From Octopus sinensis (lineage: Eukaryota), in contig NC_042997.1 of assembly GCF_006345805.1 (NCBI RefSeq), positions 140,802,001 through 140,866,000 on the forward strand: a DNA stretch of 64,000 nucleotides, read 5' to 3'. Positions within the stretch are counted from its first letter, which is position 1. Each line of letters starts with the position of its first letter. This document shows positions 21,659 to 60,400 of this stretch, in pieces. A program made the position numbers and the translations under genes. A model generated the notes under the pieces. That model saw nothing but the letters and a program-made list of their open reading frames with translations, made no database searches and was not told the origin of the DNA.

Positions 21659-21776
21659 ATCTGAGAAACTAAACATCTAAAAAGTCCCGTGTATGAGACT
21701 TTGAAGATGGGGCTTATCTGTGGCAGCCAGTCCCACAATTATGATAATGCTAAATGTAAAGAATTGTCAGACAATA
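21659..21776 (+). CDS. PALD1: Exon with 5'UTR (21659-21706) and start codon at 21707: [23 protein letters not shown]
   Basis: Acceptor ttttctattttcAG (21657-58) and donor GTAAGT at 21777. ATG has A at -3 and G at +4, with an in-frame TGA upstream at 21662. Phase 1 joins the next exon in frame. Confidence 0.75.
21693..21704 (+). promoter_or_regulatory. Minimal uORF (ATG AGA CTT TGA) ending 2 nt before the main ATG
   Basis: Read directly in the 5'UTR part of the exon; weak context (T at -3, A at +4). Confidence 0.5.
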
Positions 21777-35795: not shown

Positions 35796-38700
35796 ACGTA
35801 TGTATGTATGTATGTATTTGTGCATTTGCGTTTGTCTCCTCCCCATCAACCATTGCTTGACAACCAATGTTGGTGTGTTTACGTCCCTGTAAAATTAGGT
35901 TTACATGCCATCCTCCTTTATGATTTTATGCTAAAAGTCAAGAAGTTGGGAGGGATCTAGACAGTTATGTTTCAATGAAACAGTTTGGTCCTCAAGATCC
36001 TAGAAGTTCTTAAACTGAGCTTGTAGATTTGAATTGTTTGAAAATCTTGTGGATGGTGACATGGCTTGGAAGTTTCCAAATTTTAGGATTTTTCTGTCAG
36101 TTTTTAAGGAAATATCTATTCTCTCATCAAATGATAATGTCATTTTTCTAAAATATATAAAGCAACATGTAAATCAAAAATATTTAGAACGAAGCAAAAA
36201 TGGCATTAAAAACATAAAATCTAGGTTCAGTCCTACTGTATGACCTTGAGCTAACCAACCCTGTGTGAGTGGATTTGGTAGATGAAACTGTATGGAAGCC
36301 CATTGTATGTGTTTTGTACTCTTTGTGTTGATTTGTTTATGCTCTTGTAACTTTGCAGTTCATAAAAAAAAAAAAAACGAGTGATAGAACAGGTACCAGG
36401 CTTTAAAATAAAATAAATACTGGGGTTGATTTGTTTGACTAAACCTTTCAAGGTAGGGCCCCAGCATGGCCACAGTCCAGTGACTCAAACAAAAATATCT
36501 TTTAGCTTATGAAGGGACCTGCGAATAACCCATAGGCGCAAGAGTGGCTGTGTGGTAAGTAGCTTGCTTACCAACCACATGGTTCCGGGTTCAGTCCCAC
36601 TGTGTGGAACCTTGGGCAAGTGTCTTCTACTATAGCCTCGAGCCGACCAAAGTCTTGTGAGTGGATTTTGTTGGTGGAAACTGAAAGAAGCCTGTTGTAT
36701 ATATGTGTATATATATATGTATGTGTGTGTGTATATGTCTGTGTGTCTGTGTTTGTCCCCCCAACATCACTTGACAACTGATGCTGGTGTGTTTACGTCC
36801 CCGTAACTTAGCGATTCGGCAAAAGAGACCGATAGAATAAGTACTAGGCTTACAAAGAATAAGTCCTAGGGTCGATTTGCTTGACTAAAGGCAGTGCTCC
36901 AGCATGGCTGCAGTCAGATGACTGAAACAAGTAAAAGAGTAAAGAGAGGGTAACCCTGTGTATTGTGTTTCTGAAATTGGACCCTAAAATTTCCATAATT
37001 GTCAAATAGAAATTTTATATATGATGTTTAATTTGATTTCAAAATAATGATTTTTCTTGATTTTAATTTCAGAACCACATTTCAAGCGTAACAACATTGT
37101 GATCAGTTTCAAAAATAATGTCACAGAAGAATATCAAAACTTCAACATTATAGAGAGTTTGAAGTTTGGGAAGTTATGTGAACATACAAAAGAACATATT
37201 TTGATTGATGTAGGTTTTTAGTGATTTTGTTCTGCTTCTTTTTTGTCATTCAAACCCATTGATTTTAACCCACAACAGCACAGAAAAGAATTCCTGTATC
37301 TAATATGTAAGCCAGTATCTTGGACAGTTTTGGTGGTAGTGATGTTACGATGGCTTTGGTATTGTATTGATGTTAATTTTTATTCACCTTTTGAGAGATG
37401 AAAAGTAAAGTTGATTCCATGACCGTCTTTTCTATAAAGCTCATTTCAAGAGCTTATCAACATGGTTGCTCTTTGATCTAGATACATGCTCCTTCTTAGG
37501 CATGTGAACTCTCACCTCCTCCTCCGTTAATCTTGCCATAATGTAGGAAGATGTATAGCAAGGAATACATTATTATACATATCAGTTTACTTGAGCCAAG
37601 CTATGAATGCCACAAATGTCATGAAAGAGGAAGTGTTTATGTAATTGCAAAACTTGTTCAAAATATTAATCAAATCTCTCCATGTCTGCCTTACTGATTT
37701 ACATTCATAAATCATTTATTTTAAGTTTTAATTCCTAGAAATAATGATAAAATGCTTTCTTCAGTTGTTTTTTCTCCATTCCATAACTTTGTTCAATACA
37801 GGCAAACTATTACAGTCACCAGAATGATTAGTTATCTGAAATAACAGATTTTTTCCACTCCTTAAAGTAACCAAACTTCATGACTGTATGCTTGGATTTT
37901 ATAGTGCATATAATTTTGTAGAAGTACAGCTAACCTGAAGCACATATATTTTCGCTCAAGTACAGCTGACCTGAAGCACACAGCTTTACTCGATACAGAA
38001 ATCCTGAAGCCAGTCATGGCTCTGCTCAGGTACATCCAACATGAAACTCACCATAACTTTGTTCAAGCTTACAGTTAATCTGTGACATATAGAACATGAC
38101 TCAAGTGCAACTGACCTGGGCACCCAACAATAACAGCTACTCATGTGTGACTGTCTTTAGGATGGCATTGACTAAGGATTCCTAAATGCTCACTAGCTAC
38201 CATGAGCTTTGCTTATTAAAACCCTTGCTGGTCTCGGGATTGTTATCTTTGCCATATAACATTGGCACTTTAGCATTAGTGAGGTTGCGATGATGTGCAT
38301 TGGCAAAATTGAGCTGAACAGAAAAACTGGAAATGCATATGTCATGAGGGGAAGTAGAGATAAACATATTGAATTTGTCATTGTTTTCACCATTATTCTT
38401 TGATGAGTAAATGCCTTGCTAATTATGTGATGTCAGCATGCCATCTCAAAGCACAGTGACATTCTTCTCTTCAGTTCAAGTTAATTAATTTGGATAGGTG
38501 TAATCTGTACTTGGATTGTGACATGATAAACAGTAAGGTAATCCTTATTTAGATTATAAACATTTAGGTTATCCATATTTGGATTATGACATGATGAGCA
38601 ACAAGGTAATACAGGTTTAGATATATGATAATTAATAATGTGATCTGTAATTGGATAACAATATGATAAATACTAAAGTAATCTGTATTTGGATTTTGAC

Positions 38701-41700
38701 ATGATATACAATAAGATAATCTATATTTATCTGCAGTGTGTTTAAATGGTTAAATAGTCATTTTAAATTGTCACTAGATAATCATTCTTTGTGTTTATGA
38801 TATTTTTCCTTGGATGTTGTTCTAGAATAAATACTTCTTGGTGTCTGATCAACCTGTGGATTTTGAAGGAAAACCATTGAAAGAATCTGCAATATACAGT
38901 TCGTACTGGAAAGCTAATCACCTGCCTTTGTATGGAATGGCTCAGCCGAACACTGCTAACCTGAAGAAGATTCTAGAAATGCTTTTGGCACATAGTAAAC
39001 CAGTAAGTTTGAGATTGTCTCATAACAGATCTTTCATCGTTTACATTTAACTTTTTACTTTGTTTCAATCATTGGACTGTGGCCATACTGGAGCATTGCC
39101 TTGGAGGGTTTATTAGTCCAGCAGTTCTCAACCATTTGTTATCTATGACTCTACATCGAAGAGGCCAAGGAACAGAAGAAAGAAAACATGCACCCAACAT
39201 GAGAGCTGAAGACACCTCCGAAAGTGGGTGGGGCATGCCACATCAAAACGGTAGAGGAGTAGGGGCCGAAACCAGACGGGGTTCCTCTTGATGATGTCTT
39301 GAGCTAACTGGATCCTATAAAGGAGCTGTTGTGGTAGCAGACCATGAAACACGGTTAAAATTCCTCCTATTCTGTTCTTGTGGACCCTCTTATTTTGTTT
39401 TCCACATGTTCACTTGTGTAGGTTTGCAATAGCATTCTCTGAAAGAACAAGCTCCAGTGGCTGGAAACTTGTTGAACTATGTAAAATGCTTGAGAAACAA
39501 CTTATCTGTCTCTTGCAATAAATACATCTCAAGCAAAATTTTTTCCTGGACTCTTAAAATACTATTGTCGGTCCTCTATTTACTAGTTTACTTAGTTTAT
39601 TTGTGTGGACCCCCAAAATTCTTATATGGACCCCCATAGCTCATATGGACCCAAGTTGAGGACCACAGGTTTAGTTGAATATATCAACCCTAGTACTTAT
39701 TTGTTAAGTTTGGTACATATTCTGTTAGTCCTTTTTGCCAAACCACTTAGTTACTGGGTTGTAAAAAAAACAATTGCTGTTGTCAAGCAGTGGTGAGGGG
39801 ACAAACACAAACACACACATATACATACATACATACATACATACATACATACATACATACATACACACACATACACACACACACACACACGTATGTATAT
39901 AGATATTAATATATGATAATAATGATGATATATATATATATATATATATATATTATCATCATCTTTTAACGTCTGTTTTCCATGCTAACATAGGTTGGAT
40001 GGTTCGACTGGGGTTTAGGAAGCCAGGAGGCTGTGCAAGGTTCCAGTCTGATCTGGCAGTGTTTCTACAGCTGGATGCCCTTCCTAATGCCAACCACTCT
40101 GAGTGTAGTGGGTGCAACACAGTTTCCATCTACCAAATTCATTCACAAGGCTTTGGTTAGTCCAAGGCTGTAATAGAAGACACTTGCCCAAAGTGCCATG
40201 CTGTGGAATTGAACCTAAAATCATGTGGTTGCAAAGTGAGCTACTTAATCGCACAGCCTTGCCTCTGCCTACCTACATTATCTAAGGGGAAAAGACTGAA
40301 AAGGAAAACAATAATAATCAAACATATCGTGTTGTGAAGGGAACTGCACCAGCCTCCACTGTCCTGTTTTGGCATGGTTTTTACAGCTGGCCATCAACAA
40401 CTTTTCTCCAATGTTCTTGACTCTGAGTTGTTTTTGTCTACTTCCCTCAGTTGGATCCCTGTGTCTTCAGTTCTGCCTCTGTATCATACCTCATATATTT
40501 CCCTGAGGGAAGGCCTTCCTCTCCCTGGTCTTGTTGACTTTGAATTGTCATTAATGCTTCTGTAACTCTTTATTTTTTCTGGGTAGGGCTGTTGGCCTTG
40601 CACAACCCTGTTTTTACCTCTGGGAAGGGATGAGGTGATCCATATTAGTATGGCCTCTACCCTTTGACCTGTCCGGCATGGGAGGCTCTACCAAGAGTTT
40701 GCACTCTGTTGGTGTAGACCTCAGGGTCAGTGATATGCACAAGCCATCACACTGCAACAAGGACTGAATCTGGTGGTGGACCCATTCATTTTGGTATTGT
40801 TTTCTACTTGTTTCAGCCATTAGACTGCGGCCATGCTGGGGCACTGCCTTGAAGAATTTTTAGTTGGAGGGATTGATCCCAGTACTAAATTTTTTAAGCC
40901 TGATACTTATTCTATCAGTCTCTTTTCACTGAACTGCTAAGTTACAGGGGAGATAAATACACCAACACCAGTTGTCAAGTGGTGGTAGGGGACAAAAACT
41001 GACAGAAAGACACACAGACACGCACACACATACGCATGAACACACACATGTACACACATATATATGACAGTCTTCTTTTCAGTATCTATCTATCAAATCC
41101 ACTCACAAGGTTTTGGTCAGGCTATAGTAGGAGTCACTTGCACAAAGTGAGGTGCATACAGTGGGACTGAACCCAGAACCATGTGGTTGAAAAGCAAACT
41201 TCATACCACACAGCCATGCCTGTAATTTATTAACATTAGGGTAACTCTTTCTACGGATTTACAAAAGGAAAAATAGTAAAATGTACACTCTTGAGAATGT
41301 GACTATTGATGCTGGTATGGTATGTGGTGAAGAAGGTCACTTTGTACTCACAAGGTGTTAGAATCAGTTCCATTGCATGGCACTTTAACTCTTTAGCATT
41401 CAGATTCTTTTCTACTCTCGGCGCAAGGTCCGAAATTTTTGGGGAGGGTGCCTGTCAATTAGATTGACACCAGTACACAACTGGTACTTAATTTATCAAC
41501 CCTGAAAGGCAAAGTCGACCTCAGCAGGATTTGAACTCAGAATGTAAAAACAGACAAAATACTTCATGCTAACATTTCTGCCTGCTCGCCGCCTTTAGCA
41601 TTCAGATTATCCAATCAGATGTAATTTTTATATATCAACATCATTTGAATTAATCATGCATTATCTTGTAGTTTTGAGATTTTGATAATGCAGTTGTTTA

Positions 41701-42824
41701 TCTTTAGAATTACATTCAAGGGTAGGTGTGAGAGGCGGGATATGGACAATTTGAACATAAAACAGACAGAATATTTGGGTTAGATATGGTCATTTTAAAT
41801 ATTAAAGGGTTAAGTAAGCATCTGTACTGTAGTCCCTGGCTGACCATTGGCTTGTGAGTGAATTTGATTGAGGGAAAATGCTGGAAGCTTTCAAAACCCT
41901 GGGGGATATATAAAAAAAGGCAAAAAATCCTCTGTCAATTGAAAAGTAGATAAGGGTTGGTATAGAAAGTGCATCCAATCATAAAACCTTGCCTTAAATC
42001 CTCTGTCTAACCCATACAAACACTGAAAAATACACATTCAAATGAAGGAATGACTGATTCTTGAGAAAAGAAAATAACTGCTTCAATTCAGAGTATATGT
42101 GATGTCTTCTGTTGTAGGTTTTGCTACTTAATCTGAGAGAAGAACCAGTTTTTGTACTGGCAGTCAACCAAAATGCTGAAAATGCTGTGTCTTATTCAAT
42201 TCGGACAAAGGAGGAAGTGCATGATTGCATTGTTTCAGGATTAACTGAGAAAGAGGCCAATGAACAGGAACTGACACTTCGCAAACAGGTATCTCACTTT
42301 GCTTTTCTAATTATGTTGATGTCTCCTGTTAATTTTGAATATTATGATCATAATGTATGTTAGTTGAGGGATCATGACCTAGTGGTTAGAATGTTGTGCT
42401 CAAGATTGTGAGATCATGTTTTTAATTCCTGGATTGGGTGGTGAGTTGTATTCTCAAGTAAAACACTTCATCTCAAGTTGCTCTGTAATCGCTTCAACTC
42501 CTGACATGTGGTACAATGTGCACCTGTTCAGGTGATGCTGATTTGATGGAGAGAGTGAGCTAATGTACAGCATAAACATTTAACCCTTTTGTTACTGTAT
42601 TTATTCTGAGGGTGGCACATAAAAAGCACCATCCGACTGTGGCCGTTTGCCAGCCCTGTCTAGCACGTAAAAAGCACCCACTACACTCATGGAGTGGTTG
42701 GCGTTAGGAAGGGCATCCAGCTGTAGAAACATTGCCAGATCAGACTGGGCCTGGTGCAGCCTTCTGGCTTCCTAGACCCCAGTTGAACTGTCCAACTCAT
42801 GCTAGCGTGGAAAGCGGACGCTAA

Positions 42825-42860
<36 letters not shown>

Positions 42861-45800
42861 CTTTGTGTTTCTTTTGATTACTTTAAGTATAACAAAGAAT
42901 TTAGTAAAATAACTTAGTTATCTTTCAGCTAGTGTTAGGAACATAAATTGTGACTAAGGTTTGGTGGAAGATTTTAATTCAAAACTTATGAAAACAATAC
43001 ATTTGTACTCAGAGCCAGAGCTGATTTCAGCCAGGTTGGTAATGAAAGGGTTAATCAACCACTATAAACAAATCATTTGTGCAGGTTGCTCAGCAAGAAA
43101 ATGCAGAACTGGTTCTATCATTGGAATATGTGAGAGAGACTATCGATCTATGTATATGAAGGAAATCATGATTTCATTCCTTCACACACGCATACATGCT
43201 AACATGCATGCACACATACATACCTACAACAAATACATGCACACATAAACAGAAGATAGTTATTAAATACCTGATCAACAGGTGAGATAAGGTAGGATGC
43301 CTCTAACACAGGGGTTCCCAACTGGTGGTTCCCGACCCCCCAGGAAGTCATAAAGTCTCGGTAGGGGGTTCACATAGCCTTGATCAGTCAAGTGGCCTTA
43401 ACATGTATAACTCAATACTGGTTTCAAATTTTGGTACAAAGCCAGCAAGTTTGAGGGAAATGGGTAAGTTGATCCCGGTGCACAACTAGTACTTATTGTA
43501 TCAACTCTAAAAGGATAAAATGCAAAGCTGGCCTCAGTGGTATTTGAACTCAGAACATAAAGAGAGAAGAAATGCTGCTAAGCATTTTGCTCAGCATGTT
43601 TACCACCTTAATGCATAACTCAGTATTGGTTTCGAATTGTGGCACAAGGCCAGCAAGATCAGGGCTAGGGGTTAAGTTGCTTACATCAACCCCAATACTC
43701 AACTGGTTTTTATGTTATCAACCCTGAAAAGATGAAAGGCAAAGCTGACCTTGGTGGAATTTGAACTCAGAGCATAAAGACAGACACAATGTCACTATGC
43801 ATTTTGCCCATGTGCTAACGATTCTGCCAAGCTCACCATCTTAATGTTTAACTCAAAATTAATATGACATATATAAATCAATGTAAATGCTAAAATTTTT
43901 GGATTCTTTCACAGGTTTTAAGATATGCTGCAACAAATGACAGCTTTGATTTCCCCTTTTACAACTGCCCAACTAAAGAACCATACATTTACAATGTACA
44001 GTATGAAGATTTCCTCATAACATCCAATGAAATGTATTCCAGGTTACAGTTTGAATATGCAGGTCTCAGGTAAGCATAATGTGTGCCCAGTAAACTTAAA
44101 CAGTACTACCTACTTGTTATAACCATTTACTTGGAATTTCTCTTCGTAGTTGCTAAACATGCTAGAAAAAGCAGCCAAATTTCTACTAAAATCACACTGT
44201 GGTCATGACTGTGGCCGTTGATGTGCTCATGCTTGTGCTCATGTTTGTGTAAGTGGTTGCGGTTGTGGTCGTGCATGTGGTCATGCAGTGGATGTCTTTG
44301 AGGTAGTTGTAGTTTTGTTCTTACTGGTGGATGTTCTCCTCCTCATCTTCGTGCTCATACTTTTATCTAAAATTATATTATTAGATAATATTATATACAT
44401 ACATGAAACCTGAGAAACAAAGGCTGGATGGTCATAGCTGGAAGTTACCAATCATAGATCTGTTCAGAGAGAGAGCTGTCATGGGGCTAAACAGCAACAC
44501 TCTTTTACAAATTGTGAATTGTAACATGCACTTATACACACACACTCACACACAAATATATATCCTCCTTCTCATCCATATTGTTGTCTTCCTCCTCCTC
44601 CTCCTCATCATCATTATCAGCAACAGCAGCCACCCTTCCATCCTTCACCTCATCTTCCTCCTCTTCCTCCTCTTCCTCTTCCTAGAGTGCACTCAGAGTC
44701 GTGTGCTTGTGCAACATTCTGTAGCTACTATAGCTTCCTCCTACATCTTAAAGCAAAAAGAGCTGTAAGCTATCAAAATTGATTACATGATTCCTGTTCC
44801 CTTGTCAAATCATTAATTAATATTATGCTCTGTACTTGCCTAACACTTTACTGTAAATCATATGTCTATTGAGTTCTATTATTAGTATTGCTATGCCTAG
44901 AGACTGAAAGAGAAGAAAAACAGAAAGTTTGACTCATACTGTCTTTCTTCCTCAACTGTATATGTGTTTACTTCTGTCAGTACTGCTATGTTTCAGCTTT
45001 CTGTCTCCAATTCTTTTTCCTTAACATGGTGTGGTTTGAGGGAGATTTGACTGCTGTTTCTCAGAATGGGGAAGGGGGAGTCTTCAAGATGACACAGCGT
45101 TTGGATGTCTTGCAACTGCCACCATTGGGGAAAACATTGATCATGTTCACCACATGGTGATGGATGAGAGGCGATTGACTATAAATCAAATAGCCAATGC
45201 TATTAGAATATCCTGTGAGAGAGTTGAGAATATTTTGCACAATGAACATTGCATGATGAATGTTTTTGCTTAGTGAGTGCCACGTTTTCTGATACCTGAT
45301 CAAAAACCTAGTTGATCACACCGTGGGAAAATCTGACGTTGTTTGAGGCAGATCCAGCTTGTTCCCTTGAATGTTTCTTAAGCCTAGATGAGTGTTGCCT
45401 TCATCACTTTGAGCCAGAGATAAAGAGACAATCCATGCAGTAGAAACACTCTTCCTCACCTACTCCAAAGAAGGTCATGGTTGTTTTATCTGCGGGGAAG
45501 GTGATGGCCACAGTTTTTTGGGATGCAAAAGGCATTGTATTTATCAACTATCTTCAAAAAGGCTACACAGCAACACTCTTTTACAAATTGTGAATTGTAA
45601 CATGCACTTATACACACACACTCACACACAAATATATATCCTCCTTCTCATCCATATTGATGCTGAGGCAGTTATGAAAAGTAGTCACCTGGGTCTTGCT
45701 TTATCTGGACAATGCTCCAGCACACAAGTCATTGGTTTCAATGGCTATTGTGTATGTCTGTGTCTTTGAACTGATTGATCACCCTCTCTATTCTCCTGAT

Positions 45801-46648: not shown

Positions 46649-46693
<45 letters not shown>

Positions 46694-48093
46694 CACACGC
46701 ACATACATATATCCGACGGGCTTCTTTCAGTTTCCGTCTATCAAATCCACTCACAAGGCTTTGGTCGGCCCGAGGCTATATAGTAGAAGACACTTGCCCA
46801 AGGTGCCATGCAGTGGGACTGAACCCGGAACCATGTGGTTGGTAAACAAGCTACTTACCACATAGCCACTCCTGATGTTTTATTTGTTTTTACTTTCAGG
46901 TATTTCAGATGGTGTATGCCATTATACTCAGCATTATCAGAAGAACAATTCGATTCTTTCATTTCATTTATGAAGGTAAATTTAAACTTTCAAAAAGTAT
47001 TCTTTTCAACATTTAAATTTAATTTGTCAAAATATTTTCGTCACATTGAGACCGCGACCTGTTCACTGACAAAACTTTGTGCTGCATCTGAGAAAGTAAC
47101 AGTTAGTTCATGATATATATGTACGTATGTATGTGTGTATGTATGTATGTATGTATGTATGTATGTATGTATGTATGTATGTATGTATGTGCGTATGTAT
47201 GTATGTGTGTACATGTATGTGCACATGCATGTGTGCATGCCTATACGCATGTATGTATGTATGTACTTATGTACTTACGTATGTATGTGAGTATTTAGGA
47301 GATGTGTAGACGTGTTTGTGTGTGTGTACATGTGTATGTACCTGTGAATGTATGTTTATGTACTGATATGTGTCAGTTCAAGTTGTATACATGACTGTTA
47401 CCTTGTTGAAGGTTGTATATATACACACATATACATTTATATAGACACACACACATATATATATGTTGAAGTGAATCTAACGGTTTTTGTGTATTTCTTA
47501 AATGGCTTATAAACACTTTCCATGCTGCAATTATTTTCATTCCAGCACACGATCTCAGATCAGGTCACTTGCTATGCAAGTACAACTCCAGTAATTTTTT
47601 GTTTTTGTGTTTATACTTCATTGTCTTTCTTTCAGTTAAGATCTCTTTATAGCTGAATAATATTTACTTTCTTTGTATCTTTTCTTCTTCCTTAAATTTT
47701 CTAACAGCCATACGTCTTTGATGTGAAGCAAACCTGCATTATTCCAGCTATACTTATTGCTAAGGACAAAAGAGATGAGCGATGTACAACTGCAATGGTT
47801 CTGTGCAGTCTCCTCTATGGCAACGTTTTTGGGTTTCCACATGAAGCCAAGTAAGTTCTAGAAAGATATATCTTTTATCGTTTAGCATTAAGACTGTGGC
47901 CATGCTGGGGCAAATGCCTTGAAGAATTTTTTTAGTTAAATGAGTTGACCCTATTACTTACTTTTTGTTAAGCCTGGTACTTATTTCATTGGTTTCTTTT
48001 GCCAAACTGCTAAGTTACAAGTATGTAAACACACTAACAAGACTTGTCAAGCAATTGTAGGGAACAGACAAAGACACACATGCACGCACACAT

Positions 48094-48130
<37 letters not shown>

Positions 48131-48963: not shown

Positions 48964-49013
<50 letters not shown>

Positions 49014-52000
49014 GCCTTTAACTTTCAGCTCTTCACCAGCCAAAATCAATCCAAAGAAGCCATGCTATGAAAAAGGAGAATTCCAAGCAATTAGATCCTT
49101 GGTGTCTTTGTTACCAGATGGTTTGTTGCGAAAACAACAGGTAAATGGAACCGACTTCTACTTTATATAAAAATAAGGCCTTCAGTTTTAGCAGGCAGGT
49201 GTTAGTCAGTTTCATGCTTCCAAGGACTTGAATGGTACTTTATTTTATCCATCCTGAAAGTATGAAAAGCAGAACTATTATGGATGAGTGCCTGTTAAAT
49301 GTAAATGTAACATTGGTACTTTGATTGTTTTTATTTTGTGTGTTTATTACAAATTAATTATAGTCAGACAAATCCTTAGCACACAATAGCAAATGTGTCT
49401 TTAGCTATTTACATATAGGAACAGAAATTCCAACTGAGGTTGAATGACTGAAACACTGAGGAGGCTTAATCACATTGAAACATGTGTGCATGTGTGTGGC
49501 CATCATCTAACGTTATTCAGTCTGGTTTGATGTGTTTTTACACACAAAGTCTATAAGGAGAACCTTTTCTCTGAGACAACAATCTTGTAGCAAATATCTT
49601 CACTAGCATGTGATAAATATTAATGTACACATTGTTAAATTTTCAACAGTTTCAGGGAAGTTTTTAATGCCCCACCAGTACCATACATGGAAACATAGAA
49701 TTAAATCAGTGCATTAGATTTGATCTGCAAGTTGTAGCTTGTTAAACCCTGATTTATAAGAAACTGTTGTTATTGCTATTATATTTAAGGTGGGCTGGCA
49801 GAATTGTTAGCATGCTGGACAAATGCTTAATGATATTTCTTCCAGCTTTCTATGTTCTGAGTTCAAATTTTGCTGAGGTTGACTTTGCTTTTCACCCTTT
49901 CAGGGTTGATAAAATAAGTACCAGTTGAGTACTGGGATCAATTGTAATTGACAATCCTCTCCACCAAAATTTCCACCTTATGCCTACACTAAAACGAATT
50001 ATAACATTTTCAACAGATTTTTGTTTTTTTGGTGGATTTCTATTACATTATCAGTTGTATTGCTGTGCTCCTGAGATCTGTACAGCATTGTCTTTCAGGA
50101 ATGTAGATCTTTGTATATTATGTGTTGCAACCTTTTGATCCCGGTCTGGCTTCTGTTCAAAAGATAAATTCCTCCCTTCATTATTCAAGTTTATGAGGCA
50201 CTCAAAAGGGTCCTCAACTCATTATGACATTAAGAAAAAAAAAACCCAGAGTAAGAGATGACTAATTCAACTATGTACTGGGTAACCAACACAAAAATCA
50301 ATAATTGTATCCTGTCACCAACACCATGATATTGGTGAAAGTTTTAGTAATAATATTCAGTCTACTCTAACCAGTGAGTGAATATCATTTACTTAACTTA
50401 AGCCCTTTGTTCCCTATGGAGCATGGGCTGTTGATGACTTTTCTCCTCTGTTCTCGACTCTGGGGATGTTTTTTTGCTTCTTTTCAGTTGCTTCCCTGCT
50501 TTTTCAGCTTCACCACAGTATTTTACATATATTTCCCTGAGGGAAGGCCTTCATTTCCAAAGTTATGCTGGCTTTGAATTGTCATCAATGATTCTGTAAC
50601 TTTACATTTCCTAGGTAGGAATGTTGGCCCTATGCAAACCCATTTTTACTTCTGAGAAGGAGTGAAGTGAGTCATATTAGTTTGGCCCCTGTTCTTTGAC
50701 CTGTCCAGCATCGAAGGCTCTACCAGGATTTTGCACTTTGCTGGCATAGCTCTCAAGGTCATTGAGGTACACAAGCCACCACATTGCAGCAAGGACTGGA
50801 CTTTGTGCTAGAAATAGAGTGAGTTGCATAGGTAAATTGATGAGTCTTTTTTTTTTAGTATGTAGTGCTGATTAAAACACCTCCTGTAACATAAATTGGT
50901 ATATAAAGATGACATCTTAATATTTCAGCAAGTAGTTAGAGGATTCACCCCCCACCCCCAAGAAACCCCAGGAAATTATTTTTGCACATTTCTTGAATAT
51001 TCTGTCTGTTTCAGGTTGATGTTGTCATAGATATGTGTTGTGCTGAAGGACAAAATCTACGATTTTGTATACTACATGCTAAAAATTTGGTTTCTAAATT
51101 GTTAGAAAACCAGCAAGTAAGTTTGTTTTATATCTAAAAATTTTCTTTTTAAAATGTTTCTTGAAATTCCAGCCTATGATGCCATGTGTTTATGTGTCAT
51201 GCACATGTCTTATAACTAGTGCACAAAGGGTAAACAATTTGTGCTCAAGGCTTCCAAAATTAAATATTTTTTGTTAATTCAAGTTGGTTATTCTCATGGC
51301 TGTACACATACTTTGTGGAGAAAGACAAAATTTTCACACCACGAAATTTTTGTCTGTATACAAAATTAGTAGGAACATTAGTTATGAATAATGCGGGGGT
51401 TGAAACGATCATAATGTAAACTTTTGATTAAAAAATATATAAGTTATAGACACAGGTGTGGCTGTGTGGTAAGAAGCTTGCTCCTCAATCACATGGTCCC
51501 TGGTTCAGTCCCACTGTGTGGCACCTCGGCCAAGTGTCTTCTCCTATAGCCTCCTGCTGACCAAAGCCTTGTGAGTGGATGTGGTGGACAGAAACTGAAA
51601 GAAGCCTATCGTATATATATTAGGGTGGAGTGAAAAATGCAACTTTCGAAATTGGTAACCAAGAATTAATATTTTGTTGTGAATTAGGGTTAAAAGAAAG
51701 GTGTATAAAGAACTTTGCAGTCAAATATTTATTTCAGGCTCCACAACGCAATTGAAAATTTTTTAAATCGCTATTTTAGGTTGAATTTTGGATTTCATGG
51801 ATGACAAGTCATAACAAATACATATTTCTACATAGCAGAATGCAAAACAGTAAATATAGTATCCTTAAGAGGTTGCATACCAAGTTTCAATAAAATAGAC
51901 TATAAAGAGAACAGGAATGTGAACTTCTCTCCAGGGTCACTGCAACGGTCATTGTATGTGAATGTACATCGTACATGTGTGAAGTTTTCTGCTTTGTACC

Positions 52001-56883: not shown

Positions 56884-59800
56884 ATATATATATATATATT
56901 ATATATATATATATATATGTACATGTGTGTGATAAGGAGACTTTGAACTTGCCTTGTTGTTCTGTCTGTTTGCTGGTTGTAAACAATGGCTCACTGAAAA
57001 TATCAGATGTTGTCATTTGCTTGCAGTCCACTGTGAAAGCAAGTTCGGGCTTCTTGACATGTTTTGACATGCTGTGTGATCTTTGTAAGTAAAAAGGCTT
57101 TTTTATATAGTCATCAGTTCTCTTTGTAAACATGTCCTGGCTGTTTGCCTATCAAAAGGGTGTAAGGATATTGCTGGGGGTAGGTATTAGGAAGGGTGTT
57201 TGGTTGTAGAAAACTCTGCCCCAGGCTATTCACATCTGGCCCATGCAAGCATGGAAAAGATGGCATTAACACAATGACGACCATGATAGTTATAGCATTC
57301 ATAGTTGTAATATTAGTAGTTATGATAAGGTGGCGAGCTGGCAGAATTGTTAGCACATCAGACAAAGTGCTTAGCAACTTTTTGTCCATCTTTATATTCT
57401 GAATTTAAATACTGCCAAGGTCAGCTGCCTTTTGTCCTTTTAGGGTTGATGAAACAAGTACCAGTTGAACACTGTGGTCAATGTAACTGACTTACCTCCC
57501 CCCCCACCACCACTCCTTGGCAGAATCGTTAGCACACTGGGCAAAATGCTTGCAGCATTTCAACTGTCTTCTATATTCTGAGTTCAAATATTGCCAGGGT
57601 TGGCTTTGCCTTTCATTGTTTTGGGATTAATAATATAAGTATCAGTTGGATCCTGGGGTCAATGTAATCGACTTACCCCTACCCCCAAATTGTTGGCTTT
57701 GTGTGAAAATTTGAAGCCAGTATTTGTAGATATGATTTGTAGTTATGATATTGATAGTAATGATCTTCATATGAGGCACCACTAGCTATAATAAAAATAT
57801 TTATGATATTGATACATGTGATGTCTTATGATGTATTGTCAGAATGTAATAAAGTTGTTTACTCTCTACAAACAGATCAAAGAATCTCAGGAGGCAGCAA
57901 ACAAAGCACTTCAGTATTTAGATCGTTATTTCTACCTAATTTGTTTCAATGCATATCTTGCTGAACAGGTATGTATTTTTCCTTCATATTCAATAAACAA
58001 TATATTGTGTATTATCATGCATTATTTTGTGTCCCAACATCAAATTTTCAAGTCACATTAAAGTCAATAAAAGTTTGTGCTTGTTACTTTAAAAAAGAAA
58101 TAAATATTCCTTATATAAAAATAATTAATGTTTACAATGAAAGAATGAAGAACTGCCTGTGTGCTCACTCAGCCTGCTAGAAATAGCAGCTTAATTTTCT
58201 TCTTCATATTCTTCCTTCTTAAAAATAGAAGGATGAGTCACAAAAAAAAAAAAAATTAAAATACAAGTTGATTATGGTTGAAAAGAACGTTTGTATCATA
58301 GAACCAGGGGTGGTCCCTGGTGGTTTGGTATCAAAAGGGTTAAGAATATTGTGCAATACCTGTTGCAGAGTTAAACAAATAATTTTATAACAAAGACATC
58401 ACTATCAAGCAATGAACTTGCAGAATCAATAAAATATTTTTTCTGACTGTCTGCCTTCTGTGTTCAAATCCCACCAATGTTAACTTTGTCTTCCATCCTT
58501 TTTGGGTTTAATTGGATAATTTGAAAGGTAGTTTTCTGTTGTAACAAGATGGAATCATAGAACAAAACTTATGTTGCTTGTTTGAGTGGGTGGGGGAACC
58601 CTCACATCCAGGATATTATTAAATCTAATTTTTTTTAATTACCTATTCTGGAGTAGATAATCTATTTACTTTGCATGCTCTATTTTCCTTCGCTTCAACA
58701 CATTCTAAGGTTCAATTTCTCTTTCGACTTTTCTATTTATATTTTTACATCATAAATGGTTGGTTATCTAGAGAAAAGGACAGAAAAAACGCTATGCATA
58801 AATATTTATTTGACTAGCAGAAACCAACACTAGCAACTTCCAATAGTTCACTTGTATGATAATCATAACAATTCTTCATACTGCCATGTTGGATGAAAAC
58901 CACAATAGTTCTTCAAGCCAACACAGTAGCCTAAAGATTTGTTGTGGCTCTCATACAAGGAAACTTACATAAGTATTATATATTATATTACTAATGCCCA
59001 GACCCCTATTCAAATGTGTATAATGACTATTGTGATGCTGCTTGTTTTTGTACATCTCAAATTGGTGCTTATAGTGTTTATTTTCATATTTTCTTAGTGA
59101 TTTCATTTTATAATCCTAAATTATATAATATTGTAACTGAAAATCTGTTGAGCTCTTAGATCTGCCATTGATAAAATATAAACAGGGATTTATATGTTCA
59201 TCTCACCTTCATCACTATCACCAGCTTAATATGACCTCTGTTGTTTTGACATTTCAGGCTCGTCAGGCATTTAATATCAGCTTTAGTGCATGGATGTTGA
59301 AACATCCGAATCTTTATCGTATCCAGGAACAACTGAATCTGTTTCCCAAGAAGGGCCAAGCATTGCTGAATGAATGCATAATGGTATGTTCTCCATTGGA
59401 TAGTGTATTCCTCACTGTGTGTTAAATGGTTATGTATTTTGAATTGGGTGACATTGTTTATTGCATGGTACGTTGTGAGTTATATTTTGCATTGTATAAT
59501 ATTGACATGGCTTGAAGGTTGTTGGTCTGGTCTGTGGTGATGACTGGTTGAGTCAATGAATGAAAATTTTTGCTAAATGATATATCTCCATTTTCTTATT
59601 TTCTTTATATGTATGTGTGTGTGTATGTGTGTGATATAGACTTAGTACACTTGAAGATGGCTGGAGAATATGCAAAATAAAATCTATTGTAGGCAGGAAC
59701 AGAAAAGACGAATTCTTTCACATTACTATTGACAGGATGAATTTTTCTGTAAATGTTCATACTGTTGAAATGATTAGTTTTAAAAGCTGGACAACCTCTC

Positions 59801-60400
59801 CATTTTAATCATTCAACAATGGAGCTAATTGCCAGCCAGGTAGACTGAGGTAAGTTAGGATGGAGTTTATGTAAGAACATAATATGATGGCTGTAGTTAA
59901 TATTTAACTTTAAGTAAATGTGGTCAGTACTCTCAGCATCTTAACCCTTTCGTTACCGTATTTATTTTGAGATGTTCTGTATTTCTTTCAATTACTTTAA
60001 ATATAACAAAGAATTTAGTAAAATAACTTAGTTATTATTCAGCTAGTATTATGAGCATAAATTGTGACTAAGGTTTGGTGGAAGATTTTTATTCAAAATT
60101 TATAAAAGCAAGACATTTGTACCCAGAGCCAGAGCTGGTTTCAGCCGGGTTGGTAACGAAAGGGTTAACAATGCAAGCACTGTACCTGATTTCCATTAAT
60201 TAATAAATCTGAAAGTTATCAATCATTAAAATATAGACAGCATTGTACTTATGAAAGTAAGTCTTTCTCTCTAAATCTAGGTTGAAGACACCATCAGTCA
60301 GGAAGAGCGTTTGAGTTCAATACAGAATTTAAGTGTAGCTAACTTTCAAAAGGTCACTGGTCATCTTCCTCTTTATGGTATGGCACAACCTGTTTCTCAG
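21707..60400 (+). CDS. PALD1: Paladin-like (PALD1 family) tandem phosphatase-domain protein, 5'-partial spliced CDS, 12 coding exons, 494 codons; continues beyond window
   Basis: Exon lengths 70+137+177+171+155+76+143+112+102+93+126+120 = 1482 nt. All introns are GT-AG and phases are compatible (1,0,0,0,2,0,2,0,0,0,0). Motifs are collinear with vertebrate paladin as recalled from memory: [66 protein letters not shown]. Confidence 0.88.
23380..24330 (-). mobile_element. Degenerate RTE-clade LINE fragment (linker plus RT start)
   Basis: [16 protein letters not shown]..., [29 protein letters not shown] and [20 protein letters not shown] on the minus strand. Confidence 0.8.
25155..25812. mobile_element. 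hAT-like MITE pieces (CAG...CTG ends), partially duplicated around a family B SINE (25309-25520)
   Basis: Ends resemble CAGTGGTTTT... and ...GTTGAGAAACACTG. A related copy lies at ~23100-23350. Confidence 0.5.
26645..27027. repeat. ~100-bp minisatellite (about 4 units) derived from the family C core
   Basis: TTTTG(G/A)CATG unit starts at 26645, 26746, 26846 and 26946. Confidence 0.85.
29400..30200 (+). mobile_element. Very old CR1/L2-group LINE 3' fragment
   Basis: Remnants such as [16 protein letters not shown] and NYENGLCS...MFIPS...LQKLKRNIN resemble CR1-group C-termini recalled from memory. Confidence 0.4.
30552..30922 (+). mobile_element. Family A SINE
   Basis: Head GGAGTGGC...GGTTCC and tail GACTGAAACAAGTAAAAGAG. 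Confidence 0.85.
31118..32098 (+). mobile_element. 5'-truncated R4/Dong-clade non-LTR retrotransposon (CCHC knuckle plus restriction-like endonuclease) in (TAA)n
   Basis: KPLYGKY...[40 protein letters not shown] and KYKDL. One frameshift near 31760, then [11 protein letters not shown]...[12 protein letters not shown] (TAA 31870-72). TAA repeats flank both ends. Confidence 0.92.
32513..33350 (+). mobile_element. Three further R4/Dong 3' fragments separated by (TAA)n: 32513-32662, ~32720-32991, 33048-33350
   Basis: First is a repeated 3'UTR of the 31118 element. The other two encode IVGALG..K..DKYI...[19 protein letters not shown] and share a second type of 3'UTR. Confidence 0.85.
33627..33866 (-). 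mobile_element. Family B tRNA-head SINE (AAGGCGGCGAGCTGGCAGAA head), representative copy
   Basis: About 20 copies, e.g. 3692-3840, 6713-6900, 7612-7830, 21210-21535, 25309-25520, 41407-41595, 43420-43840, 49790-49990, 55425-55635, 57328-57720, 60460-60858, 63504-63735. B-box-like GAGTTCAAATTCC. Confidence 0.85.
36535..36947 (+). mobile_element. Family A tRNA-head SINE, full length
   Basis: A box TGGCTGTGTGGT, B box GGTTCAGTCCC, central TA/TG microsatellite and AGAGTAAA tail; many copies in the window. Confidence 0.9.
37073..37209 (+). CDS. PALD1: Coding exon 2: (K)[45 protein letters not shown]
   Basis: AG at 37071-72, GTAGGT at 37210. Resembles paladin VVITYNCKEEF...LGRLSDNTPEHYLVQ. Confidence 0.85.
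38826..39002 (+). CDS. PALD1: Coding exon 3: NKYFLVSDQ...[29 protein letters not shown]
   Basis: ctAG acceptor, GTAAGT donor at 39003. Contains YFLV and YGMAQP paladin motifs. Confidence 0.92.
41385..41813. mobile_element. TTAA MITE family 1 containing a family B SINE (41407-41595) with 13-bp TSD
   Basis: TAGCATTCAGATT at 41394-41406 and 41596-41608; TTAA ends at 41385 and 41810. Confidence 0.8.
42118..42288 (+). CDS. PALD1: Coding exon 4: [14 protein letters not shown]...EQELTLRKQ
   Basis: tgtAG acceptor, GTATCT donor. Contains the LREEPV motif. Confidence 0.92.
42580..43054. mobile_element. TTAA MITE family 2 interrupted by a family C element (42611-~42860)
   Basis: Flanks rejoin to match the intact copy at 59941-60168. 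Confidence 0.8.
43915..44069 (+). CDS. PALD1: Coding exon 5: [51 protein letters not shown](R)
   Basis: ctttcacAG acceptor, GTAAGC donor. Open frame; phase 2 matches the next exon. Confidence 0.85.
45062..46070 (+). mobile_element. Degenerate mariner (DD34D-type) transposon
   Basis: [42 protein letters not shown] and [17 protein letters not shown]. Right TIR ends ...AACCCTCA|TA at 46070. Confidence 0.9.
46431..46874 (-). mobile_element. Family A SINE, full length, ending 25 nt upstream of exon 6
   Basis: Reverse complement matches 36535-36947; CpGs are largely retained, suggesting a young copy. Confidence 0.9.
46900..46975 (+). CDS. PALD1: Coding exon 6: (R)[25 protein letters not shown]
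   Basis: actttcAG acceptor, GTAAAT donor. Matches paladin YRYHRLPL...EAQLDAFVSVLR. Confidence 0.87.
47708..47850 (+). CDS. PALD1: Coding exon 7 (P-loop exon of domain 1): [47 protein letters not shown](N)
   Basis: Long pyrimidine tract plus ctaacAG acceptor, GTAAGT donor. It is the phase 0-to-2 exon needed to bridge exons 6 and 8, and aligns to PALVFSCQMGVGRTNLGMVL. Confidence 0.85.
48432..48946 (-). mobile_element. ~515-bp non-coding interspersed element flanked by (TTA)n on both sides
   Basis: Complex sequence embedded in a TAA/TTA microsatellite like the Dong fragments; no convincing ORF; family not assigned. Confidence 0.55.
49029..49140 (+). CDS. PALD1: Coding exon 8: [37 protein letters not shown]
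   Basis: actttcAG acceptor, GTAAAT donor. Contains the GEF..I..LV..LP.G motif typical of paladin. Confidence 0.9.
51015..51116 (+). CDS. PALD1: Coding exon 9: [34 protein letters not shown]
   Basis: tttcAG acceptor, GTAAGT donor. Contains the VD..ID.C motif. Confidence 0.9.
51621..53818. mobile_element. 2.2-kb TIR DNA transposon relic inside the TA tract of a family A SINE, itself interrupted by family C (52085-52720)
   Basis: TAGGGTGGAGTG at 51621 and CACTCCACCCTA ending 53818. SINE head at 51471-51620 and SINE 3' half from 53819. ORF remnant LFDISCCKC...[17 protein letters not shown] at 53030-53299. Confidence 0.75.
53887..54322 (+). repeat. 218-bp tandem duplication of a SINE 3' half
   Basis: Units 53887-54104 and 54105-54322 differ at two positions by eye. 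Confidence 0.9.
54839..55024. repeat. 3 x 63-64-bp tandem repeat within a family C element
   Basis: ATGTG(C/T)CACCGACACAGGTGCCAGAC... starts at 54839, 54902 and 54966. Confidence 0.9.
55099..55184. other. 86-nt hairpin: 37-bp arms, one mismatch, 12-nt loop
   Basis: 55099-55135 is the reverse complement of 55148-55184 except for T55120/T55163. Confidence 0.95.
56308..56541 (+). mobile_element. Chimeric SINE: family D tRNA-like head fused to family A tail and poly(A)
   Basis: GGAGGCGCAATGGCCCAGTGGTTAGG...GGTTTCGATTCC head to 56475, then AAAGGCGGTGCTCCAGCATGGCCGCAGTCAAATGACTGAAA (family A 3' end). Confidence 0.7.
56542..56920. repeat. ~380-bp almost pure (TA)n compound tract
   Basis: Direct reading. 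Confidence 0.95.
57876..57968 (+). CDS. PALD1: Coding exon 10: [31 protein letters not shown]
   Basis: aacAG acceptor, GTATGT donor. Contains the hallmark L.RYFYLI.FN.YL.EQ. Confidence 0.95.
59258..59383 (+). CDS. PALD1: Coding exon 11: [42 protein letters not shown]
   Basis: atttcAG acceptor, GTATGT donor. Contains the SFS.W...HP.LYR motif. Confidence 0.93.
59941..60168. mobile_element. Intact piggyBac-like MITE family 2 with perfect 13-bp TIR
   Basis: TTAA|CCCTTTCGTTACC ... GGTAACGAAAGGG|TTAA. Confidence 0.9.
60281..60400 (+). CDS. PALD1: Coding exon 12 (start of domain 2): [40 protein letters not shown]
   Basis: ctAG acceptor, GTAAGT donor. Matches VANFRRVPRMPIYGTAQP and repeats the exon 3 motif [10 protein letters not shown], showing the internal domain duplication. 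Confidence 0.93.

What the first reader, a model, noticed from the sequence alone, without database searches (positions are those of the whole stretch)
47762..47782. Paladin domain-1 P-loop is KDKRDER, not CX5R: an apparent cephalopod pseudophosphatase domain
Seen: exon 7 encodes [20 protein letters not shown]. Established: cysteine-based phosphatases need the CX5R nucleophile, and vertebrate paladin has PALVFS-CQMGVGR-TNLGMVL here (recalled from memory). The flanks align without gaps and the invariant Arg is kept, but Cys is replaced by Lys and the Gly-rich loop is now alternating charged residues. The frame and splice sites are intact, so this is not a pseudogene. Inference: domain 1 is catalytically dead and repurposed, for example as a scaffold or phospho-ligand binder, or this is a divergent paralogue. 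A Cys directly follows the Arg but is in the wrong register to act as nucleophile.
Basis: partly seen in the sequence, partly recalled or inferred. Interest (0 to 1): 0.75.

Follow-up and report, generated by a model that had tools for sequence, protein, structure and literature searches.

The report
Octopus paladin lost its catalytic cysteines
The window holds the first half of the Octopus sinensis paladin gene, and in octopuses (not squid-like cephalopods) its first phosphatase domain has swapped the essential cysteine for lysine yet is still conserved, so it is a real but fairly ordinary "dead enzyme" domain.

Summary
Window 47762-47782 (+) encodes KDKRDER where paladin domain 1 normally carries CX5R. 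It lies in exon 7 (47708-47850), which has AG/GT splice sites.

The window matches Octopus sinensis chromosome CM016859.1 exactly over 44,294 bases. My 12-exon model equals the first 494 residues of RefSeq "paladin".

The exon is used in every O. sinensis, O. vulgaris and O. bimaculoides protein model. It is also used in an assembled octopus RNA-seq transcript. No alternative CX5R exon exists nearby.

The loss is not general among invertebrates. A gastropod, two bivalves, a chiton, a coral and cuttlefish-type cephalopods keep Cys. It is also not cephalopod-wide. All four octopods have [KR]DK[KR]DER-C, and cuttlefish-type transcripts have C[SN]NG[QH]ER-S.

Domain 1 remains under purifying selection (omega 0.15-0.25 for the domain, 0.09-0.23 for exon 7).

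Outside the window, domain 2 of O. sinensis and O. vulgaris has also lost its Cys (GSSGIER), as has Argonauta independently. All octopods have Asn at the putative acid-loop Asp. This species' paladin is therefore probably wholly non-catalytic.

It is a new member of a known kind, the pseudophosphatase. Similar domain-1 losses occur in flukes and a tunicate. Interest is moderate.

The parts
21707..21776 (+). Exon 1 of paladin. It holds the start codon and encodes [23 protein letters not shown], with Gly2 for possible N-myristoylation.
   Evidence: GT donor. Identical to O. sinensis XP_029635182.1.
37073..37209 (+). Exon 2.
   Evidence: AG/GT borders. Matches P0196.
38826..39002 (+). Exon 3, the start of PTP-like domain 1. 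It encodes ...[17 protein letters not shown]. The usual NFR motif reads YWK here.
42118..42288 (+). Exon 4 ([10 protein letters not shown]...). The Pfam PTPlike_phytase match begins here.
43915..44069 (+). Exon 5.
46900..46975 (+). Exon 6, the domain-1 'acid loop' region [17 protein letters not shown]. There is no Asp at the columns where vertebrate domain 1 (PVDG) and domain 2 (PDF) carry one.
47708..47850 (+). Exon 7, the strand, P-loop and helix of domain 1.
   Evidence: It is 143 nt in Octopus and Argonauta alike. Omega is 0.09-0.23.
47762..47782 (+). P-loop heptad K281-D-K-R-D-E-R287, replacing CxxGxxR. The changes are Cys to Lys and the conserved Gly to Arg. The Arg is kept.
47783..47785 (+). 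Cys288 (TGT) at the position after the P-loop Arg, which is normally Ser/Thr. It is Cys in all four octopods and Ser in decapodiforms.
49029..49140 (+). Exon 8.
51015..51116 (+). Exon 9 ([17 protein letters not shown]...).
57876..57968 (+). Exon 10. The second of two candidate acceptors is the one used, as shown by the annotated proteins.
59258..59383 (+). Exon 11, the end of domain 1.
60281..60400 (+). Exon 12, the start of domain 2 (…[23 protein letters not shown]). The domain-2 P-loop exon lies beyond the window end.

Best explanation
**What it is.** The window carries exons 1-12 of the single-copy paladin orthologue of Octopus sinensis. Exon 7 encodes the phosphate-binding loop of the first PTP-like (PTPlike_phytase) domain.

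**The change.** In the octopod lineage, after it split from the decapodiform cephalopods, this loop changed from C-[SND]-N-G-x-E-R-S to [K/R]-D-K-[K/R]-D-E-R-C. The nucleophilic Cys, the loop Gly and the Ser/Thr after the Arg are all gone. Domain 1 therefore cannot carry out the cysteinyl-phosphate chemistry of this enzyme class.

**Selection.** The new loop and the whole domain have since been held under purifying selection. Domain 1 is a maintained pseudophosphatase domain, not decaying sequence.

**Domain 2 (outside the window).**
- All octopods have Asn where other invertebrate paladins have the putative general-acid Asp.
- O. sinensis and O. vulgaris have additionally replaced the domain-2 Cys by Gly.
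- Argonauta made the same replacement independently.

**Inference.** Octopod paladin works without phosphatase catalysis, as a membrane-associated scaffold or binding ('antiphosphatase'-type) protein. The first domain's charged loop probably serves as a structural or binding surface.

**Shown:** gene identity, exon use, residue changes, their phylogenetic distribution, and purifying selection.

**Inferred:** loss of activity and the non-catalytic mode of action.
For: **Sequence and splice sites:**

**Identity with O. sinensis:**
- 44,294 bp overlap with the O. sinensis locus, 0 mismatches.
- 494/494 residues identical to RefSeq paladin P0196; 493/494 to O. vulgaris.

**Family:**
- Pfam PTPlike_phytase reaches the P-loop, E = 1.3e-14.
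- The AF2 model has strand 276-281, a loop, then helix 286-303, mirrored in domain 2.
- The best fold match is the tandem PTP-like phytase 3F41, followed by other PTP-like inositol phosphatases.

**Exon use:**
- Every annotated Octopus isoform contains KDKRDER.
- The RNA-seq contig from an octopus metatranscriptome has KDKKDER in frame.
- There is no CX5R-bearing open segment of paladin type in 44070-51015.

**Distribution:**
- Octopods carry K/R at the Cys column.
- Decapodiform-type transcripts (13 cluster members; one cluster contains a Sepia/Acanthosepion pharaonis protein), Haliotis, Mytilus, Sinanodonta, Liolophura, Porites and vertebrates carry Cys.

**Orthology:** the cephalopod clade, the octopod clade and the decapodiform pair are each at 100/100 NJ bootstraps.

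**Selection:**
- Domain 1 omega is 0.15-0.25.
- Fisher p = 7e-17 to 4e-38 for pN < pS.
- Exon 7 p = 7e-4 to 9e-6.
- The heptad shows only K<->R changes.

**Domain 2:**
- The codon at the Cys position is GGC in O. sinensis, TGC in O. bimaculoides, TGT in the other octopus and GGA in Argonauta.
- The change is polarised to the O. sinensis branch.
- The acid-loop Asp is Asn in all octopods.
- The acid position is anchored by the DUSP23 alignment.

**Literature:**
- Paladin's catalytic status is disputed, and Cys-independent function has been reported in chick (as summarised in PMC8299082 and PMC7857541).
- The plant PTP-C domain carries Ser in place of Cys.
Against: - No enzyme or binding data exist, so loss of activity is predicted from residues only.
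- The general-acid assignment rests on alignment, not on a paladin structure. Even Cys-bearing molluscan domain 1 lacks a clear Asp there.
- The AF2 model is of moderate quality (mean pLDDT 65, pTM 0.47; 65 over residues 281-290). It says nothing reliable about the pocket.
- dS to Argonauta and between the decapodiforms is saturated (above 1.3), so those omega values are rough.
- A conserved Cys sits right after the Arg (C288), and an unconventional mechanism cannot be excluded.
- The domain-2 findings lie outside the window. For Argonauta they rest on a single assembly.
- No RNA-seq reads of O. sinensis itself were examined.
Confidence: 0.8

Rival explanations
1. Gene-model or assembly artefact. 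The real transcript skips exon 7 or uses another exon carrying CX5R, or the Lys codon is a sequencing error.
For: O. sinensis reads were not inspected. RefSeq models are predictions.
Against: - The same loop occurs in three independent Octopus assemblies and in Argonauta.
- An assembled octopus RNA-seq transcript contains the orthologous exon in frame.
- No alternative CX5R exon is present.
- Cys (TGY) to Lys (AAG) needs three base changes.
Confidence: 0.02
2. It is a divergent paralogue. A canonical paladin with CX5R exists elsewhere in octopus genomes, and this copy is free to diverge.
For: Octopod sequences are only about 46% identical to decapodiform ones and evolve faster (omega about 0.2-0.35 against 0.08). 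Whole octopus genomes could not be searched here.
Against: - The profile-plus-word search seeded with decapodiform and octopod sequences returned a single Octopus cluster.
- The gene tree follows the species tree with 100% support.
- Shared lineage-specific features link the two groups as orthologues: the MG(L/M)ICGS N-terminus, the Ser-rich insert before the domain-2 loop, and FNPAYCFF.
Confidence: 0.03
3. Domain 1 is functionless and simply decaying. The loop is drift, not a maintained feature.
For: Domain-1 catalytic motifs are labile across animals: flukes, Styela, lamprey (CRSGTGC) and a sea snake (CQTGVGT). Octopod omega is higher than decapodiform omega.
Against: - Domain 1 omega is 0.15-0.25 with very small p-values.
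- Exon 7 omega is 0.09-0.23.
- The heptad shows only K<->R exchanges across lineages whose synonymous sites are saturated.
- Frame, exon length and splice sites are conserved from Octopus to Argonauta.
Confidence: 0.05
4. Domain 1 is still an enzyme with a rearranged active site. For example, the octopod-conserved Cys288 just after the Arg could act as a relocated nucleophile, or the site could use a non-Cys mechanism.
For: - Ser to Cys at the position after the Arg is fixed in all four octopods.
- By established PTP structural knowledge (my own recall, not tested here), the side chain at that position lies next to the nucleophile site.
- The loop is conserved rather than random.
Against: - The loop Gly needed for the P-loop backbone cradle is Arg/Lys.
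- Three acidic residues in the loop should repel phosphate.
- No acid-loop Asp is present.
- No precedent is known to me for a nucleophile at R+1 in this fold.
- The model is too weak to support it.
Confidence: 0.05
5. A-to-I RNA editing, which is widespread in coleoid cephalopods, restores a functional residue at the protein level.
For: Coleoids recode many transcripts by editing (general knowledge). The loop codons are A-rich.
Against: Editing of AAG can give only Glu, Arg or Gly codons, never Cys (TGY). The domain-2 GGC has no A at all. Editing could at most toggle K/R.
Confidence: 0.01

Closest known systems
Vertebrate paladin (PALD1/KIAA1274)
   Same: - It is the orthologous gene. Both have an N-terminal MG start and two tandem PTPlike_phytase domains, each followed by a helical region.
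- The exon-7 region aligns without gaps and the P-loop Arg is kept.
- Its catalytic status is itself debated. It has been called a pseudophosphatase or antiphosphatase, and also a PI(4,5)P2 phosphatase.
   Different: Vertebrates keep CxxGxGR-T in both domains. O. sinensis has KDKRDER-C in domain 1 and GSSGIER-T in domain 2. Octopod domain 2 also has Asn at the acid-loop Asp column.
Plant PALADIN PTP-C domain (rice PALD, PMC8299082)
   Same: It is a paladin-family PTP-like domain that has lost the catalytic Cys within a multi-domain protein. It has been proposed to act through protein-protein interaction rather than catalysis.
   Different: - In plants the dead domain is an extra third domain and carries Ser.
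- PTP-A, the first domain, is the one whose Cys is genetically required.
- In octopods it is the first domain that died, with Lys/Arg and a fully recharged loop.
Membrane-distal D2 domains of receptor PTPs, and STYX/MTMR-type pseudophosphatases
   Same: A PTP fold is retained, catalytic residues are substituted, and the domain is kept by selection for binding or regulatory roles (general knowledge; PMC7320164 and PMC9640194 appeared).
   Different: They belong to a different PTP subfamily. Usually a partner domain or partner protein stays active. In O. sinensis both tandem domains lack the Cys.
Paladins of trematodes and the tunicate Styela clava
   Same: They show independent loss of the domain-1 Cys (and Arg) while domain 2 keeps CX5R.
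   Different: Their loops are different (G[RH]K[IM].D.., GLTGEGP) and the Arg is lost too. Octopods keep the Arg, gain a Cys after it, and go on to lose the domain-2 Cys in two lineages.
Tandem PTP-like phytase PhyAmm of Mitsuokella multacida (PDB 3F41)
   Same: It is the best structural match to the model: two PTP-like inositol phosphatase repeats in one chain.
   Different: It is a bacterial enzyme with 12-14% identity, and both repeats keep CX5R. The match shows fold and architecture only.

Membership tests
Paladin (PALD1 orthologue group) | Tandem PTPlike_phytase (PF14566) domains | tested here: met
   - Pfam hit on the window-encoded domain 1: E = 1.3e-14, profile positions 1-157 of 158.
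- PF14566 is precomputed on the Octopus protein.
- The fold search's top hits are tandem and single PTP-like inositol phosphatases.
Paladin (PALD1 orthologue group) | Orthology: the gene tree follows the species tree, and the gene is single-copy | tested here: met
   NJ tree with 100% bootstrap for cephalopods, octopods and the decapodiform pair. Only one Octopus cluster was recovered. Whole-genome absence of a second copy was not testable.
Paladin (PALD1 orthologue group) | N-terminal Met-Gly start (membrane anchoring by lipidation) | tested here: met
   MGLICGS is encoded at 21707. The lipid modification itself cannot be tested with these tools.
Catalytically competent Cys-based PTP (CX5R) | Nucleophilic Cys six residues before the P-loop Arg | tested here: not met
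   Domain 1 has K281 (AAG, window 47762-47764). Domain 2 of the same species has G686 (GGC, outside the window).
Catalytically competent Cys-based PTP (CX5R) | P-loop Arg | tested here: met
   R287 (CGA, 47780-47782). Domain 2 also keeps R692.
Catalytically competent Cys-based PTP (CX5R) | Conserved loop Gly (CxxGxxR) and Ser/Thr after the Arg | tested here: not met
   Domain 1 has Arg284 at the Gly column and Cys288 after the Arg. Domain 2 keeps Gly and Thr.
Catalytically competent Cys-based PTP (CX5R) | General-acid Asp in the preceding loop | tested here: inconclusive
   - Domain 1 reads CMPLYSA with no Asp. Other molluscan domain 1 sequences also lack a clear Asp.
- Octopod domain 2 reads PLPLNY, against decapodiform PLPSDY.
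- The column is anchored only by alignment to DUSP23 (IPDFC).
Catalytically competent Cys-based PTP (CX5R) | Measured phosphatase activity | not testable with these tools
   This needs recombinant protein and substrate assays.
Pseudophosphatase domain | Phosphatase fold retained | tested here: met
   Pfam match across the domain. The strand-loop-helix is predicted at the P-loop. Foldseek probability is 1.0 to PTP-like phytases. Model confidence is only moderate.
Pseudophosphatase domain | Essential catalytic residue substituted and fixed in the lineage | tested here: met
   K or R at the Cys column in O. sinensis, O. vulgaris, O. bimaculoides, a further octopus transcript and Argonauta.
Pseudophosphatase domain | Maintained by purifying selection (not a pseudogene) | tested here: met
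   Omega is 0.15-0.25 for domain 1 and 0.09-0.23 for exon 7. Fisher p is as low as 4e-38. The 20-exon structure is intact in three genomes.
Pseudophosphatase domain | Demonstrated lack of activity together with a non-catalytic function | not testable with these tools
   This is an experimental question.

The most novel reading that the evidence does not exclude
The octopod domain-1 loop [KR]DK[KR]DER-C is not merely dead but a new functional site. One option is an active site with a relocated nucleophile, the conserved Cys just after the Arg. The other is a newly evolved charged binding site that took over paladin's role. If so, catalysis in domain 2 became dispensable, which would explain why its Cys was then lost twice (O. 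sinensis/vulgaris and Argonauta).
Probability: 0.08. Interest if true: 0.75.

Novelty: new member of a known kind. Interest (0 to 1): 0.4.

Why it matters
**The open question.** It is unsettled whether paladin acts as a phosphatase or as a non-catalytic 'antiphosphatase'. A PI(4,5)P2 phosphatase activity has been reported in mouse. In chick neural crest the Cys appears dispensable. In rice the first-domain Cys is required.

**The natural experiment.** Octopods offer a graded series under continued purifying selection:
- cuttlefish-type cephalopods keep both cysteines;
- O. bimaculoides keeps only the domain-2 cysteine;
- O. sinensis, O. vulgaris and Argonauta keep neither.

If confirmed biochemically, this shows that a conserved paladin function does not need catalysis. 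It also gives matched natural variants for testing which domain does what.

**Limits on interest.** The gene is already annotated as paladin, pseudophosphatase domains are a familiar theme, and domain-1 loss has happened elsewhere (flukes, a tunicate). The surprise to a specialist is therefore moderate.

Tried and rejected
**Searches and submissions that failed**
- The word-indexed protein search with exon 7 alone found nothing.
- The same search with a concatenated exon translation found only two vertebrate paladins.
- Octopus paladins are nevertheless in that collection. Those empty results reflect the index, not absence.
- An alignment of separate exon peptides to vertebrate proteins was badly misaligned and was discarded.
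- I therefore searched with a two-vertebrate profile.

**Gene model correction**
- My first model for exon 10 used the upstream acceptor (57843). The annotated proteins showed that the downstream one (57876) is used.

**Arguments downgraded**
- I first treated loss of the acid-loop Asp in domain 1 as evidence for inactivation. Other molluscan domain 1 sequences with Cys also lack it, so this was downgraded.
- I tested for extra relaxation of domain 2 on the O. sinensis branch after its Cys loss. Polarised substitutions are equal on the O. sinensis and O. bimaculoides branches (17 against 18), so there is no support.

**Dead ends**
- Sequence search of the PDB found no paladin structure, only a weak DUSP23 match.
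- A literature search for cephalopod paladin found nothing relevant.
- The Roffers-Agarwal 2012 paper is not held.
- The species of the Logan transcripts in the P0018 cluster (SRR27666067-80, SRR24189504) could not be identified.
Full report
**What is at the coordinates.** Window 47762-47782 on the + strand reads AAG GAC AAA AGA GAT GAG CGA, which is K-D-K-R-D-E-R. It lies inside an open segment that starts after an AG at 47708 and ends at a GTAAGT donor after 47850. The exon encodes [47 protein letters not shown].

**Gene model and source.**
- I pieced together 12 exons on the + strand: 21707-21776, 37073-37209, 38826-39002, 42118-42288, 43915-44069, 46900-46975, 47708-47850, 49029-49140, 51015-51116, 57876-57968, 59258-59383 and 60281-60400.
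- All internal borders are AG/GT. Together they give an uninterrupted 494-codon frame.
- The window overlaps the locus of RefSeq 'paladin [Octopus sinensis]' (GCA_006345805.1, CM016859.1) over 44,294 bases without a mismatch.
- My translation equals the first 494 residues of that 878-residue protein. It is 493/494 identical to O. vulgaris and 472/494 to O. bimaculoides.
- The full gene has 20 exons, and the window ends in the intron after exon 12.
- Pfam places PTPlike_phytase (PF14566) on the window-encoded domain, ending exactly at the loop (E = 1.3e-14).

**Is the exon really used?**
- All five Octopus sinensis/vulgaris protein models and the O. bimaculoides model contain KDKRDER. This includes shorter O. 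vulgaris isoforms that differ elsewhere.
- A 2.8 kb assembled RNA-seq contig (SRR3401912) encodes a full-length 878-residue orthologue with the equivalent exon in frame and the loop KDKKDER. A paper describes that run as an octopus metatranscriptome.
- A scan of all + frames from the end of exon 5 to the start of exon 9 found no CX5R in an open, paladin-like context.
- tblastn with vertebrate paladins hit only exon 7 for this region.

**How general is the change?** A profile search of 1.84 billion representative proteins, followed by cluster look-ups, gave named paladins across animals. The domain-1 loops are:

| Taxon | Domain-1 loop |
|---|---|
| Vertebrates | CQTGVGR-T |
| Porites (coral) | CHVGQGR-T |
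| Liolophura (chiton) | CHSGIGR-S |
| Mytilus | CNSGQDR-A |
| Sinanodonta | CQMGFGR-S |
| Haliotis | CDNGKER-S |
| Decapodiform-type cephalopod transcripts | CSNGQER-S, CNNGHER-S |
| O. sinensis, O. vulgaris, O. bimaculoides | KDKRDER-C |
| Second octopus (SRR3401912) | KDKKDER-C |
| Argonauta hians | RDKKDER-C |

- One decapodiform 90% cluster contains a Sepia/Acanthosepion pharaonis protein. All 13 members inspected keep both CX5R motifs.
- Against Haliotis the alignment is ungapped, from a shared Pro-Ala four residues before the Cys column to the Glu-Arg. Lys therefore truly occupies the Cys column.
- A neighbour-joining tree recovers cephalopods, octopods and the decapodiform pair, each in 100 of 100 bootstraps. 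These are orthologues, not a paralogue pair.
- The loss is therefore neither general among invertebrates nor cephalopod-wide. It arose on the octopod stem.
- It is not unique. Three trematodes (G[RH]K..) and the tunicate Styela (GLTGEGP) have lost the domain-1 Cys independently. A lamprey (CRSGTGC) and a sea snake (CQTGVGT) have lost the Arg.

**Selection.** I rebuilt full coding sequences for three genomic loci and three transcripts. Each translated exactly to its protein. I then computed Nei-Gojobori estimates.
- Domain 1 (residues 70-454) has omega 0.24-0.25 among Octopus-type sequences and 0.15-0.17 against Argonauta.
- One-sided Fisher tests for pN < pS give p from 7e-17 to 4e-38.
- Exon 7 alone has omega 0.09-0.23 (p = 7e-4 to 9e-6).
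- The heptad shows only K<->R exchanges and synonymous changes, across lineages whose synonymous sites are saturated.
- The decapodiform pair has omega about 0.08, so octopod paladin is less constrained but clearly not neutral.
- Caveats: dS above 1.3 is unreliable, and these are pairwise counts, not branch models.

**Domain 2 (outside the window).**

| Species | Domain-2 loop | Codon at Cys position |
|---|---|---|
| O. bimaculoides | CPSGIER | TGC |
| Second octopus (SRR3401912) | CSTGIER | TGT |
| O. sinensis and O. vulgaris | GSSGIER | GGC |
| Argonauta | GRTGIER | GGA |

- With the other octopus as outgroup, the Cys-to-Gly change maps to the O. sinensis branch. The Cys was therefore lost at least twice.
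- All four octopods have Asn (PLPLNY) where decapodiforms (PLPSDY) and other invertebrates have an Asp. That Asp lies in or next to the column that aligns with the general-acid Asp of DUSP23 (IPDFC).
- Domain 2 shows omega near 1 between O. sinensis and O. bimaculoides (0.52 downstream of a fast-evolving Ser-rich insert). The replacements are split evenly between the two branches, so I cannot claim extra relaxation after the Cys loss.

**Structure.**
- An AlphaFold2 model of the O. bimaculoides protein, built from a 9-sequence alignment, is of moderate quality (mean pLDDT 65, pTM 0.47).
- It predicts strand 276-281, a short loop and helix 286-303 around the domain-1 motif, and the same arrangement at 680-708 in domain 2.
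- Foldseek's best PDB match is the tandemly repeated PTP-like phytase of Mitsuokella multacida, followed by some thirty PTP-like inositol phosphatase chains.
- The fold and tandem architecture are therefore retained.
- The model is not good enough to judge the pocket.

**Mechanism.**
- Cys-based phosphatases of this class form a cysteinyl-phosphate intermediate. The Cys sits at the base of a loop whose backbone amides and Arg hold the phosphate, and a Ser/Thr after the Arg assists hydrolysis. This is established knowledge of the PTP superfamily.
- Domain 1 of octopods lacks the Cys, the loop Gly and the Ser/Thr. It places three acidic residues in the loop. I therefore consider it unable to act as a conventional phosphatase (confidence about 0.9).
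- The new loop is conserved and the domain is constrained, so it is a maintained pseudophosphatase domain rather than debris.
- For O. sinensis, with both cysteines gone and Asn at the putative acid position, the whole protein is probably non-catalytic (about 0.75).
- The likely mode of action is as a membrane-associated scaffold or binding protein. This fits the 'antiphosphatase' idea proposed for chick paladin, as summarised. This last step is inference (about 0.5).
- A-to-I editing cannot recreate Cys from AAG or GGC.

**Rivals.** The following are each addressed in the rivals section, and none has more than about 5% support:
- artefact or alternative exon;
- paralogue;
- neutral decay;
- relocated nucleophile (Cys288);
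- RNA editing.

**Comparison and novelty.**
- This is the paladin orthologue, already annotated as such.
- The kind of event, a tandem phosphatase domain turning into a pseudoenzyme, is well known from receptor PTP D2 domains, STYX/MTMR proteins and the Ser-bearing PTP-C domain of plant paladin.
- Three things appear undescribed (no relevant literature found): the octopod-specific timing; the conserved recharged loop with a new Cys after the Arg; and the stepwise, repeated loss of the second Cys.
- I rate it a new member of a known kind, with moderate interest (0.4). Its main value is as a natural experiment on whether paladin needs catalysis.

Noticed in passing
L009:48776-48778 (O. sinensis locus, about 4.5 kb beyond the window end); L007:46283-46285; L010:23016-23018: The domain-2 catalytic Cys codon is GGC (Gly) in O. 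sinensis and O. vulgaris and GGA in Argonauta. It is TGC in O. bimaculoides and TGT in another octopus. That makes two independent losses of the second nucleophile.
   Followed up: yes
Domain-2 acid loop, outside the window (residues about 604-612 of P0196): All octopods read PLPLNY / PLAANY where decapodiforms read PLPSDY and other invertebrates have Asp. The preceding YxR is YxH in octopods.
   Followed up: partly
window 46976-47707 (intron 6): Intron 6 is 732 bp here but only 139 bp in O. bimaculoides. Much of the extra length is microsatellite: (TATG)n at 47114-47288 and a TA/CA-rich repeat at 47416-47463.
   Followed up: partly
window 31115-31777 (+), in intron 1: A 221-codon open frame has a zf-RVT match just below the Pfam cut-off (E = 1.6e-5). 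It is probably the C-terminal remnant of a non-LTR retrotransposon.
   Followed up: partly
window 45040-46046 (+), in intron 5: Broken frames carry a mariner/Tc1-like transposase signature (…[16 protein letters not shown]…). The Pfam DDE_3 hit is only weak (E = 0.002).
   Followed up: partly
window, many places on both strands, e.g. 19369-19491 (+), 60513-60650 (-), 63579-63923 (-): A short interspersed repeat translates in one frame to …[14 protein letters not shown]…. It recurs throughout the introns and flanks.
   Followed up: no
P0193 (O. vulgaris CAI9716055.1, 851 aa): This annotated isoform lacks 27 residues (GFPPGTLPGEQERISLFDAEQSMGNFP) just after the domain-2 helix. That corresponds to skipping of exon 17.
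   Followed up: no
P0001 (Laticauda laticaudata) and P0004/P0179 (Petromyzon marinus): The domain-1 loops are CQTGVGT and CRSGTGC. The P-loop Arg is replaced while the Cys is kept, so domain 1 is evolutionarily labile in vertebrates too.
   Followed up: no
The word-indexed homologue search missed the Octopus and Argonauta paladins when queried with window-derived peptides. They are in the collection, so an empty result from that tool is not evidence of absence.
   Followed up: yes
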